The notes beneath the pieces are model-generated. The model did not search any database. It saw nothing but the letters and a program-made list of their open reading frames with translations, and was not told where the DNA came from. Below, one piece after another: positions 4,784 to 5,835 of a stretch of 64,000 nucleotides of DNA (the stretch's first letter is position 1; every line of letters starts with the position of its first letter). The stretch lies in IMG/VR virus record IMGVR_UViG_3300024308_000018, positions 62,001 through 126,000 of that record. One strand, written 5' to 3'. The translations under genes were made by a program, and so were the position numbers.

Positions 4784-5835
4784 AATACCCCGCGAGCGCG
4801 AGGTAGAAACGAAAACGGGCAGGCCGAAGCCCACCCGTCATCATAACTTTATGCCACTTGATTAAGTGGTTGGGGCCGAAGCCCAGAGCAAAGAGCTAAC
4901 ACTTTATCTTGGGATGGACGCGATCAGGAATACGCGTCCCAAAATAAAACGGGCGGCCGAAGCCACCCGTGTTACGTCATATATTCATAGAGCCGCGATA
5001 GGATGCGCGGGAGCAAAGAGCAAGTGTTATTGCTGTGTGTACTATTGCCGATATTGTATCGTCAAAATAAAAAAGGGCAGGCCGAAGCCCACCCTTTTGT
5101 TCATTTTCATATGGATGCAGCTTGAGGGCCGCGAGCAAAGAGCGCCATTGAGTTTTAACAGCATGCAATTGGTTAGGAGATCGCTCTCCCAAAATAAAAG
5201 GGGCAGCCGAAGCCACCCCTTTTGTATCGCTTATGTCAGAAGGCCCACATGAGATGGGCGAACAAAGAACTATCTAAATTTGGCCAACGCTTTTGCGTCA
5301 GAACCATTCCTCAAAATAAAAGGGCAGCCGAAGCCGCCCATTTTGGATACGAGACAGAGTGTGTATCACACTCAGGAACAAAGAACATCGGCCCGTCCGA
5401 ACCATAGGGCCTACACAATATAAAGGGGCAGCCGAAGCCACCCCTTTCACAACTAGCTTTAGAAAACTGGAGACCAGCGTGGGCGCTGGGAACAAAGAAC
5501 ATTGAGGCACTGCAAAATCTTGCACCACTAGCACCACTGATATTTGTTTACAGATTCTGCGGGAATCGTGTCACTAATAAAAATGGGCAGCCCGAAGGCC
5601 ACCCATTTGGTCTATGTGTCTTGTGAGTAAGGCGGATGCAGCCCGCGAGCAAAGAGCAACAAGGATAGAAATGAATAATCAGAGAAAAGGCTTCCCCAAT
5701 AAAAATGGGCGACCGAAGTCACCCATCTTGATCGTATAAACGAAGAATTGAGAGATGCTTATGAAAAACACCGAGCAAAGAGCGGAGCATGGTAGTTATG
5801 CCTGTCAATAAAAACGCCCCCGACGAGTCAGGGGC
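4784..5835 (-). ncRNA. array of eight ~120-nt structured RNA units (putative small/guide RNA array)
   Basis: Strictly alternating UUCG terminator-like hairpins (starting ~4811, 4941, 5064, 5191, 5313, 5417, 5576, 5698, plus a variant at 5807) and 11-mers GAGCAAAGAGC/GAACAAAGAAC (4886, 5011, 5133, 5260, 5376, 5490, 5647, 5773). Each 11-mer abuts a sequence-variable stem. G-U pairs and cUUCGg loops form only on the minus strand. Confidence 0.8.

What the first reader, a model, noticed from the sequence alone, without database searches (positions are those of the whole stretch)
4784..5835. Array of eight structured small-RNA-like units: conserved handle, variable segments, UUCG terminators
Seen in sequence: two conserved elements alternate strictly with a 104-159-nt period. 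Read on the minus strand, each unit is a G-initiated variable hairpin, a ~16-32-nt variable linker, GYUCUUUGYUC, an immediately adjacent 4-7-bp stem, a ~12-30-nt unique AT-rich segment, and a GGGUGGC-UUCG-GCUGCCC-type hairpin with a UUUUAUU tract. The middle stem changes sequence but keeps pairing (CCGCG/CGCGG, GCCCA/UGGGC, CCAGCG/CGCUGG, GGUGU/GCAUC). Plus-strand mismatches become G-U pairs and the loop becomes cUUCGg only on the minus strand, and the terminator stem covaries (GAC/GUC in one unit). This pattern indicates selection on RNA structure rather than on DNA sequence. It is not a CRISPR (no identical repeats) and shows no box C/D motifs like TIGR arrays. Inference: a cassette of guide-like or antisense RNAs with a shared protein-binding handle, lying directly downstream of a co-oriented 3-gene operon.
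Basis: partly seen in the sequence, partly recalled or inferred. Interest (0 to 1): 0.9.

Follow-up and report, generated by a model that had tools for sequence, protein, structure and literature searches.

The report
Tandem boxA-like RNA modules in phage
An uncultivated jumbo phage carries eight tandem non-coding units, each joining the core of the bacterial boxA antitermination signal to a hairpin and a strong terminator, which suggests RNAs built to engage the host NusB-S10 transcription factor pair; no such array has been described.

Summary
Window 4807-5806 (minus strand) holds eight units of 104-159 nt. Each has a variable 5' part, the 11-mer GYUCUUUGYUC, an adjacent stem of changing sequence, an AU-rich spacer and a UUCG-loop terminator.

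The exact 11-mer occurs nowhere else in the 64 kb. Orthologous arrays exist in seven further uncultivated lineages (flanking-protein identity 96% down to 45%), giving 53 units. Every unit keeps G-[C/U/A]-U-C-U-U-U.

Helices are kept through compensatory changes: 34 pairs changed on both sides, against 2-10 in slid controls. G.U pairs outnumber A.C mismatches 188 to 8, so selection acts on minus-strand RNA. There is no Rfam hit.

The invariant core equals nucleotides 2-8 of boxA, the site bound by host NusB-S10 (NusE). The one variable position is also the degenerate one in the published consensus GYTCTTTAANA. The adjacent stem recalls boxB of nut sites. The phage encodes a sigma-like protein, so it probably uses host RNA polymerase.

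Best reading (inferred, untested): nut-like RNA modules that bind NusB-S10, most likely as decoys; cis antitermination is the main rival. The "guide/antisense" reading found no support. Only unit 3 has a recognisable promoter, and this remains unexplained.

The parts
5815..5836 (-). Intrinsic terminator T0 of the upstream three-gene operon. Its stem differs from the array terminators, and its U tract runs to about 5807. Just before it lies a degenerate boxA-like GUCCUUUGCAU.
5837..5903 (-). Conserved non-coding leader between the stop codon of the 124-aa gene and T0.
   Evidence: Nearly invariant in three lineages, well above the 76-81% identity at third codon positions.
5698..5806 (-). Unit 1 (109 nt): boxA-like 11-mer 5783-5773, stem 5772-5754, terminator stem 5725-5706.
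   Evidence: The stem changes from GGUGU/GCAUC to GAUGU/ACAUC, and to a different hairpin, in orthologues.
5576..5697 (-). Unit 2 (122 nt): 11-mer 5657-5647, stem 5646-5632, terminator stem 5605-5584.
5417..5575 (-). Unit 3 (159 nt), the only unit with the phage promoter-like motif (AAUCUGUAAACA, core 5553-5547): 11-mer 5500-5490, stem 5489-5474, terminator stem 5444-5425.
   Evidence: Promoter weight-matrix score 24.5 bits. The stem pair A-U changes to C-G in 4 of 6 lineages.
5313..5416 (-). Unit 4 (104 nt): 11-mer 5386-5376, 9-bp stem with one mismatch 5375-5355, terminator stem 5340-5321.
   Evidence: A G-C to A-U compensatory change occurs in orthologues.
5191..5312 (-). Unit 5 (122 nt): 11-mer 5270-5260, stem 5259-5243, terminator stem 5219-5200.
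   Evidence: In L137/L129 the stem is replaced by an unrelated stem at the same place.
5064..5190 (-). Unit 6 (127 nt): 11-mer 5143-5133, stem 5132-5117, terminator stem 5095-5074. This unit is absent from the 50%-identity lineage L139.
4941..5063 (-). Unit 7 (123 nt): 11-mer 5021-5011, stem 5010-4993, terminator stem 4969-4950.
4807..4940 (-). Unit 8 (134 nt): 5' hairpin with two pairs changed on both sides, 11-mer 4896-4886, stem 4884-4873, an extra hairpin, terminator stem 4837-4816.
4727..4806 (-). Very conserved stretch after the array. A hairpin at 4805-4786 is flanked by direct repeats of UCGUUUCU. It is followed by the promoter-like motif (core 4763-4757) and the 5' UTR of the 310-aa gene.
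   Evidence: About 90-100% identical even in L139, where the flanking protein is only 50% identical. One pair changes A-U to G-C.
5904..8063 (-). Upstream co-oriented operon: a 269-aa protein (8063-7254), a 322-aa peptidase-like protein (7257-6289) and a 124-aa protein (6278-5904).
   Evidence: (phrog_17197). The same gene order is seen next to every related array.
3794..4726 (-). Downstream 310-aa gene of unknown function. It is the first gene of the operon that continues to the clamp loader (3289-2093).

Best explanation
Each unit is a nut-like RNA module. It carries a boxA core (N-G-Y-U-C-U-U-U) followed 4 nt later by a hairpin of arbitrary sequence, with a stable terminator hairpin at its 3' end. 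The modules are transcribed from the minus strand by host RNA polymerase.

I propose that the boxA core binds the host NusB-S10 (NusE) dimer. I further propose that the eight modules work mainly in trans, as stable decoy RNAs that draw NusB-S10 away from its normal clients. Those clients are rRNA operon antitermination complexes and the nut sites of competing lambdoid phages. Array copy number (3, 7 or 8 units in different lineages) would set the dose. The same boxA elements may also help the polymerase travel through the untranslated array.

Shown:
- the anatomy of the units;
- their conservation across lineages;
- selection on minus-strand RNA structure;
- identity of the invariant core with the boxA nucleotides that NusB-NusE reads.

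Inferred: binding, release as small RNAs, and titration.
For: 1. All 53 terminator-delimited units in 8 lineages have exactly one G[C/U/A]UCUUU. Six core positions never change. Third codon positions of the flanking gene differ by 19-26% even between the closest lineages.
2. The core equals boxA nucleotides 2-8. The E. coli rrn boxA is UGCUCUUUA and the gamma-proteobacterial consensus is GYTCTTTAANA. The only variable core position here is the Y of that consensus. The rare A variant (GAUCUUUG) matches the B. subtilis rrn boxA-like sequence that binds NusB. GUUCUUUA is the Legionella CRISPR-leader boxA.
3. The NusB-NusE crystal structure shows base-specific reading of nucleotides 1-8 only, a key pocket for U8, and no base-specific contact at nucleotide 9, which is G in Aquifex and G here. 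In lineage L124 two extra bases sit right after the core in all three units. This fits a footprint that ends at nucleotide 8.
4. NusB-NusE has a double-stranded-RNA surface contiguous with the boxA site, proposed to hold the boxB stem. Here a stem always follows, kept by compensatory change or outright replacement.
5. The phage encodes a sigma-like protein (phrog_17569, E 3e-94). It therefore likely uses the host core polymerase, on which Nus factors act.
6. The motif is confined to the array in the window and in about 21 kb around each related array. It is therefore not a general promoter.
7. Many copies of a short protein-binding site on hairpin-capped RNAs is the design of known protein-sponge RNAs.
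8. The title of Friedman et al. [quoted passage not shown] NusB:NusE binds rrn-type boxA with a Kd of 5-8 nM.
9. The operons on either side have their own terminator and their own promoter. Read-through is therefore not obviously needed.
Against: - No binding or expression data exist, and the host is unknown.
- Positions 8-11 (G-Y-U-C) depart from the gamma-proteobacterial consensus A-A-N-A.
- The strongly conserved second element, GYUC, is not explained by the 8-nt NusB-NusE footprint.
- Only unit 3 has a recognisable promoter. The other seven have neither the phage motif (scores below 4 bits against 24 bits) nor a sigma-70-like site. Discrete decoy RNAs therefore need an unknown promoter class, or terminator read-through plus processing.
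- Predicted accessibility of the core is no higher than background (0.54 against 0.50).
- Unit-specific sequences conserved between orthologues suggest extra functions that a plain decoy does not need.
- A 7-nt match to one of many known short motifs could be coincidence.
Confidence: 0.4

Rival explanations
1. Cis-acting antitermination cassette. Each boxA loads Nus factors, perhaps with an unknown phage factor, onto the transcribing host polymerase. The polymerase then reads through the terminator that follows. The array would be a graded, Nus-dependent gate, or a way to transcribe a long untranslated precursor, between the upstream operon or the unit-3 promoter and the downstream replication operon.
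For: - boxA is classically a cis element placed ahead of terminators and at the start of long non-coding transcripts such as rrn operons and CRISPR arrays.
- Every boxA here lies 46-58 nt ahead of a terminator stem.
- Seven of eight conserved units lack their own promoter. They can only be expressed if terminators are read through.
- The phage uses a sigma-like factor and hence probably the host core enzyme.
Against: - rrn-type boxA complexes are reported to act on Rho-dependent terminators only. Intrinsic terminators need lambda N bound to boxB.
- The stems here share no loop sequence that an N-like protein could read.
- One boxA per operon suffices in known systems, whereas here there are eight, each followed by a strong terminator.
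- The downstream operon has its own promoter.
- The neighbouring proteins show no N-like or Nus-like features.
Confidence: 0.2
2. The units are a family of sibling regulatory or guide RNAs. The shared 11-mer plus stem is a handle for a phage-encoded RNA-binding protein, or a common seed. The unit-specific segments select different targets. The match to boxA is coincidental.
For: - The architecture (5' hairpin, single-stranded conserved stretch, hairpin, AU-rich stretch, terminator with U tail) is that of base-pairing small RNAs.
- Each unit keeps its own conserved sequences between orthologues.
- C/U variation at the two Y positions would also be tolerated in pairing to G.
- The element GYUC next to the stem is conserved beyond what NusB-NusE needs.
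- The best, though non-significant, fold matches of the adjacent 124-aa protein are Sm/Lsm proteins (E 0.3-2, probability 0.21 or less).
Against: - No target complementarity was found in the 64 kb beyond promoter and terminator copies.
- A 2-nt insertion splits the 11-mer in all units of one lineage, which a contiguous seed would not tolerate.
- The neighbouring proteins have no detectable RNA-binding domain.
- The exact coincidence of the invariant core and its single degenerate position with boxA would be left unexplained.
Confidence: 0.25
3. A plain stack of terminators insulating two operons. It grew by tandem duplication, and the 11-mer and stems are carried along without a function of their own.
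For: - Eight strong terminators lie in series between two operons.
- Units are clearly paralogous. Units 4 and 5 share AUGGUUCNGAC, and the terminators are near-identical.
Against: - The 11-mer core is invariant in 53 units down to 45% flanking-protein identity, while the terminator sequences themselves are replaced in L132.
- Stems next to the core are kept by compensatory change and by replacement.
- One or two terminators would be enough to insulate.
Confidence: 0.05

Closest known systems
nut sites of lambdoid phages (boxA - spacer - boxB hairpin)
   Same: A boxA core on the nascent RNA is followed by a hairpin. The site is encoded by a phage, lies ahead of terminators, and acts through host Nus factors on host polymerase.
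   Different: Lambda boxA is CGCUCUUA, a weak site lacking U8. Here the core is rrn-type with UUU. The spacer is 4 nt rather than 8-9. The hairpin has no conserved N-binding loop. There are eight copies in tandem, each with its own terminator. No N-like protein was found.
rrn operon leader/spacer boxA and the rRNA antitermination complex (NusA, B, E, G, SuhB, S4)
   Same: The core GCUCUUU is identical and includes U8. A small hairpin lies upstream and the RNA context is non-coding. NusB:NusE affinity for this type of site is 5-8 nM.
   Different: The rrn sites continue AACAA and have a boxC. There is one site per leader or spacer, not an array. They act on Rho-dependent termination in a transcript several kb long.
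boxA upstream of CRISPR arrays and of suhB/nusB (Stringer 2020 as cited in PMC7862264; Baniulyte 2017, PMC5725501)
   Same: Here too boxA is used outside rRNA, ahead of repetitive untranslated transcripts (CRISPR arrays) or in 5' UTRs (suhB, nusB). The variant GUUCUUUA is functional in Legionella.
   Different: Those cases have a single leader boxA and no terminators between repeats. The repeats are identical and are processed by Cas proteins.
Protein-sequestering small RNAs (CsrB/RsmZ for CsrA, CrcZ for Hfq/Crc, 6S RNA for sigma-70 holoenzyme)
   Same: Works-like resemblance only. Many copies of a short protein-binding motif are displayed on stable structured RNA ending in a terminator, and dose is set by motif number.
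   Different: The motif and the protein differ. In those RNAs the sites sit within one transcript, whereas here each sits in its own terminator-bounded unit. No sponge for NusB-S10 is known to me.
boxA competition plasmids (Friedman et al. 1990, Genes Dev 4:2210, cited in PMC2724277)
   Same: An experimental precedent, recalled from memory apart from its title, that transcribed boxA competes for a limiting host factor.
   Different: That was a laboratory construct, not a natural element.
Clusters of sibling base-pairing small RNAs (Qrr1-5, OmrA/B, PrrF1/2, LhrC1-5)
   Same: These are tandem or multi-copy small-RNA genes with a shared single-stranded conserved stretch and intrinsic terminators.
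   Different: In those clusters each gene has its own promoter and the shared stretch is a seed with known targets. Here only one promoter and no target were found.

Membership tests
boxA (NusB-NusE/S10 binding element) | The 8-nt element read by NusB-NusE: N1-G2-Y3-U4-C5-U6-U7-U8 on the transcribed strand. G2, C5, U6 and U8 are critical. | tested here: met
   All 53 units have G-[C29/U21/A3]-U-C-U-U-U on the strand defined by the terminators and G.U pairs. Features taken.
boxA (NusB-NusE/S10 binding element) | The extended gamma-proteobacterial consensus GYTCTTTAANA, where positions 8-11 are A-A-N-A. | tested here: not met
   Positions 8-11 here are G (49/53), Y, U, C. G at this place occurs in the Aquifex and B. 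subtilis boxA, and the structure shows no base-specific contact there. The host's own boxA is unknown.
boxA (NusB-NusE/S10 binding element) | Binds the NusB-S10 heterodimer with nanomolar affinity, and binding is lost on core point mutations. | not testable with these tools
   Needs EMSA or fluorescence anisotropy as in PMC2800207.
boxA (NusB-NusE/S10 binding element) | Single-stranded in the RNA. | tested here: inconclusive
   Mean predicted unpaired probability of the core is 0.54, against 0.50 for other 8-nt windows. Minimum-free-energy folds mostly leave it open.
lambda-type nut site | A boxB hairpin with a conserved loop that binds an N-family arginine-rich peptide, plus an N gene in the phage. 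| tested here: not met
   A hairpin is present, but loops are 3-10 nt with no shared sequence. No N-like protein was detected among the neighbours.
lambda-type nut site / rrn antiterminator | Confers terminator read-through in cis. | not testable with these tools
   Needs reporter assays.
CRISPR array | Near-identical direct repeats of 23-50 nt alternating with unique spacers of similar length. | tested here: not met
   The only shared blocks are an 11-mer and the terminators. The period is 104-160 nt.
Any Rfam 15 family | A covariance-model score at or above the family's gathering threshold. | tested here: not met
   The best hit is MicX at 31.2 bits against 75, and it aligns terminators only.
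Sibling base-pairing small RNAs | An own promoter per gene, and a conserved seed complementary to target mRNAs. | tested here: inconclusive
   A promoter was found for unit 3 only. No target was found in the 64 kb. The host genome is unknown.

The most novel reading that the evidence does not exclude
A phage-encoded multi-copy boxA RNA sponge. Eight stable small RNAs titrate host NusB-S10, collapsing rRNA-operon antitermination as a form of host shut-off. They could equally starve the N-dependent antitermination of competing or resident lambdoid phages. This would be the first natural RNA decoy aimed at a transcription elongation factor.
Probability: 0.3. Interest if true: 0.85.

Novelty: new variant of a known kind. 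Interest (0 to 1): 0.7.

Why it matters
Nus-factor antitermination is a textbook phage-host interface. It is known only as single cis sites (lambda nut, rrn leaders, CRISPR leaders, suhB). A conserved tandem array of rrn-type boxA modules in a jumbo phage that brings its own sigma-like factor would show a new use of that signal. The use could be a trans-acting sink for NusB-S10, or a multi-step terminator gate.

Either way it gives a short, testable handle on how an uncultivated jumbo-phage clade manipulates host transcription elongation. It would also provide a natural, compact reagent for titrating NusB-S10 in cells. The array further defines an unannotated structured-RNA family (53 members so far) that is absent from Rfam.

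Tried and rejected
- Rfam scan at permissive E-values: only sub-threshold terminator look-alikes.
- blastn of the array and of 20 kb around it against cultured phages, plasmids and E. coli genomes: no match.
- IMG/VR pattern scan for two spaced 11-mers: 117 or more hits. All were chance matches or coding repeats except the window's own contig.
- Protein-anchored scans of IMG/VR: only the window's own contig.
- The JGI metagenome scan added one contig, L129.
- GTDB genome scans: a conserved 22-mer of unit 8 gave nothing. The paired 11-mer pattern hit only (GCTCTTT)n heptamer microsatellites.
- 11-mer as a general phage promoter: rejected, because it is confined to the array.
- Small ORFs in the units: rejected, because the 11-mer falls in different frames and no start or Shine-Dalgarno pattern is shared (read).
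- Sigma-70-like promoters in each unit: none found. Manual checks of -35/-10 spacing failed except for a weak candidate in unit 7.
- Weak copies of the CTGTAAA promoter in other units: none.
- A second over-represented promoter motif in the window: none found.
- Complementarity of unit segments to the rest of the window: only promoter and terminator copies, plus one marginal 15-mer.
- Syntenic regions of Yoloswag, Alexandra and AD1: no boxA array.
- Functions of flanking proteins: Pfam, PHROGs, PDB sequence search, AlphaFold2 and Foldseek gave nothing significant. The Sm-like and clamp-like hints are below any threshold.
- Literature search for phage boxA decoys or for the promoter motif: nothing found.
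Full report
**Observation.** On the minus strand of window 4807-5806 there are eight consecutive units of 109, 122, 159, 104, 122, 127, 123 and 134 nt. Each unit ends in a G-rich hairpin with a UUCG loop and a U tract. 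Terminator stems lie at 5725-5706, 5605-5584, 5444-5425, 5340-5321, 5219-5200, 5095-5074, 4969-4950 and 4837-4816.

Each unit holds one copy of GYTCTTTGYTC, starting at 5783, 5657, 5500, 5386, 5270, 5143, 5021 and 4896. These eight are the only exact copies in the 64 kb, and all lie on one strand. By my arithmetic about 0.1 are expected. The repeat finder gives terminator spacings of 104-160 nt. A stem of unit-specific sequence starts right after the 11-mer in every unit.

**Context.** The window is part of a 229.7-kb IMG/VR contig. It belongs to a jumbo phage only distantly related to cultured ones. Identity to Erwinia phages Yoloswag, Y3 and Alexandra, Dickeya phages JA11 and AD1, and Pseudomonas phage PaBG is 37-39% for one conserved protein and at most 28% for the peptidase-like protein.

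The array lies between a co-oriented operon (269-aa protein, peptidase-like protein, 124-aa protein), which ends in its own terminator at 5836-5815, and an operon that starts with a 310-aa gene and runs to the clamp loader.

The phage encodes a sigma-like protein (19001-20104; phrog_17569, E 3e-94; Pfam Sigma70_r2 only sub-threshold). It therefore probably transcribes with the host core polymerase.

A motif, AAT-CTGTAAA-CA, occurs 18 times against 4.3 expected. It sits 20-70 nt upstream of co-oriented start codons and is also present in the cultured relatives. It behaves as the phage promoter. One copy lies inside unit 3 (core 5553-5547) and one lies before the 310-aa gene (4763-4757). No other unit scores above 4 bits, against 24 bits for these two. 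No sigma-70-like site is found in the array.

**Relatives.** Homologues of the two flanking proteins led to contigs from sewage and other metagenomes that carry orthologous arrays. These are:
- L122/L121/L123 (96% peptidase-like identity);
- L129/L137 (94% peptidase-like, 73% 310-aa);
- L140 (88% 310-aa);
- L134-L136 (83%);
- L124 (76%, partial);
- L139 (50%, seven units);
- L132 (45%, three units).

Units are orthologous one to one. In all there are 53 terminator-delimited units in eight lineages. Each has exactly one G-[C 29 / U 21 / A 3]-U-C-U-U-U, followed by G (49/53), Y, U, C.

In L124 two extra bases separate the 7-mer from GYUC in all three units. In L132 the terminators have a different sequence and the adjacent stem is not evident, yet the motif persists. 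In about 21 kb around each related array the motif occurs only in the array. Cultured relatives have no such array at the syntenic site. The three neighbouring small proteins have no homologue in cultured phages.

**RNA-level selection.** Third codon positions of the flanking gene are 74-81% identical among the three closest lineages.

In eight orthologous unit alignments of six lineages, RNAalifold predicts 192 pairs. Of their cells, 95.9% are paired, against 40-54% when the 3' partner is slid by 1-3 columns. Thirty-four pairs show changes on both sides, against 2-10 in the slid controls. G.U cells number 188 against 8 A.C. The opposite strand would therefore carry about 188 mismatches.

Examples:
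- The unit 3 stem changes from CCAGCG/CGCUGG to CCCGCG/CGCGGG.
- The unit 8 5' hairpin has two pairs changed on both sides.
- The unit 5 stem is replaced by an unrelated stem at the same position.

A perfect stem of at least 4 bp starts within 1 nt of the motif's end in 41 of 53 units. Shuffles gave a mean of 13.1 and a maximum of 21. The unit 4 orthologues, which have a 9-bp stem with one mismatch, are not counted by this strict test.

The two Y positions do not covary. The 5' parts are largely conserved between orthologues, and the spacer before each terminator is the most variable part.

**What the 11-mer is.** The invariant core is the core of boxA, the RNA element bound by the host NusB-S10 (NusE) dimer. 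I first recalled this from memory and then checked it in papers.
- The E. coli rrn boxA is UGCUCUUUA and the lambda boxA is CGCUCUUA (PMC2724277).
- The gamma-proteobacterial consensus is GYTCTTTAANA (PMC5725501).
- A B. subtilis rrn sequence, AUGAUCUUUGAAA, binds NusB (PMC13753749).
- GTTCTTTAAAA is the boxA of a Legionella CRISPR leader and raises array transcription about ten-fold (PMC7862264).
- The NusB-NusE-boxA crystal structure shows base-specific contacts to nucleotides 1-8 only. U8 sits in a pocket at the protein interface. No base-specific contact is made to nucleotide 9, which is G in Aquifex. A double-stranded-RNA surface is contiguous with the boxA site and is proposed to hold the boxB stem (PMC3177189).
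- NusB:NusE binds rrn boxA with a Kd of 5-8 nM and lambda boxA with 80-90 nM. G2, C5 and U6 mutations weaken binding (PMC2800207).

The array motif therefore has all seven defined core bases of the rrn type. Its single degenerate position is the degenerate one of the consensus. It tolerates insertions exactly where the protein footprint ends, and it is followed by a stem. It departs from the gamma-proteobacterial consensus at positions 8-11. It also has a second conserved element, GYUC, that the known footprint does not explain.

**Mechanism.** I infer that the units are nut-like RNA modules that engage NusB-S10. Two read-outs are possible.

*Decoys in trans.* In favour:
- eight copies, and 3, 7 or 8 in other lineages;
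- each copy ends in a stable terminator hairpin, and most begin with a 5' hairpin;
- a high-affinity type of core;
- flanking operons that have their own terminator and promoter;
- the 1990 boxA competition experiments (title read, content recalled from memory).

*Antitermination in cis.* In favour: seven units lack a promoter, so conserved units 4-8 can only be expressed by read-through. Against:
- rrn-type complexes are reported not to suppress intrinsic terminators without N and boxB;
- the stems share no loop;
- one boxA normally suffices.

A hybrid is possible, in which boxA-assisted read-through is followed by processing into boxA-bearing RNAs. I commit to the decoy reading at about 0.4, with cis antitermination at about 0.2. 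Binding, RNA species and effects on the host are all untested. Predicted accessibility of the core is not above background.

**Other rivals.** A family of base-pairing or guide RNAs with a phage-protein handle (about 0.25) fits the small-RNA-like architecture and the unit-specific conserved segments. However, I found no target. The split motif in L124 argues against a contiguous seed. The neighbouring proteins also show nothing significant. The 124-aa protein's best fold matches are Sm/Lsm proteins at E 0.3-2, and the 310-aa protein has weak sliding-clamp-like matches at E about 1. A passive terminator stack (about 0.05) does not explain an invariant core in 53 units.

**Novelty.** There is no Rfam family and no similar DNA in cultured phages, plasmids or E. 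coli genomes. I found no paper describing phage boxA arrays or NusB decoys. boxA and nut sites are known, but a tandem array of boxA-hairpin-terminator modules is a new arrangement. I rate it a new variant of a known kind, with interest 0.7.

Noticed in passing
window, 18 sites, e.g. 10945, 18124, 20099, 38006, 46856, 51128 (+) and 8503, 7299, 5553, 4763 (-): AAT-CTGTAAA-CA occurs 18 times against 4.3 expected. Nearly all copies lie 20-70 nt upstream of co-oriented start codons. The motif is also present before genes in Yoloswag, Alexandra and AD1. It is probably the promoter read with the phage sigma-like factor.
   Followed up: partly
window 19001-20104 (+): A 367-aa protein matches phrog_17569 'RNA polymerase sigma factor' (E 3e-94), but Pfam Sigma70_r2 only below threshold (E 0.005). 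It looks like a divergent phage sigma.
   Followed up: partly
window 4727-4850 (-): The end of unit 8, its terminator, a hairpin (4805-4786) flanked by direct repeats of UCGUUUCU, and the promoter of the 310-aa gene are about 90-100% identical even in a relative with 50% protein identity. One hairpin pair shows a compensatory change. This looks like a regulatory element of its own.
   Followed up: partly
window 5834-5848 (-) and 44848-44862 (+): A 15-nt stretch of the conserved leader before T0 is perfectly complementary to the region 10-24 nt upstream of the ATG at 44872, covering its Shine-Dalgarno sequence. About 0.1 such matches are expected by chance, so this is marginal.
   Followed up: no
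L144, L156, L159, L174, L183, L184, L210 and many others (genome-contig hits): Long tandem heptamer microsatellites, (GCTCTTT)n and variants, often just after terminator-like hairpins. They occur in Myroides, other Bacteroidota, Paenibacillus, Nitrospira and others. The repeat unit equals the boxA core. They are unrelated to the phage array in structure.
   Followed up: no
L141 9480-9960, L142 9475-9960, L120 18680-19250: Alexandra, AD1 and Yoloswag have a conserved non-coding stretch of about 450 nt with strong hairpins (e.g. GGACUCCAAUAGG...CCUAUUGGAGUU) at the syntenic position of the array. This may be a different structured RNA.
   Followed up: no
window 5904-6278 (-): The 124-aa protein directly upstream of the array is clade-specific. 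Its AlphaFold2 model (pLDDT 67) has Sm/Lsm proteins as its best, but non-significant, PDB matches.
   Followed up: partly
window 3794-4726 (-): The 310-aa protein upstream of the clamp-loader gene has weak, non-significant fold matches to DnaN sliding clamps (E about 1). It might be a divergent clamp.
   Followed up: partly
window 15103-16200 (+): A 365-aa protein matches phrog_1706 'CRISPR/Cas system associated' (E 9e-14), probably a Cas4/RecB-like nuclease.
   Followed up: no
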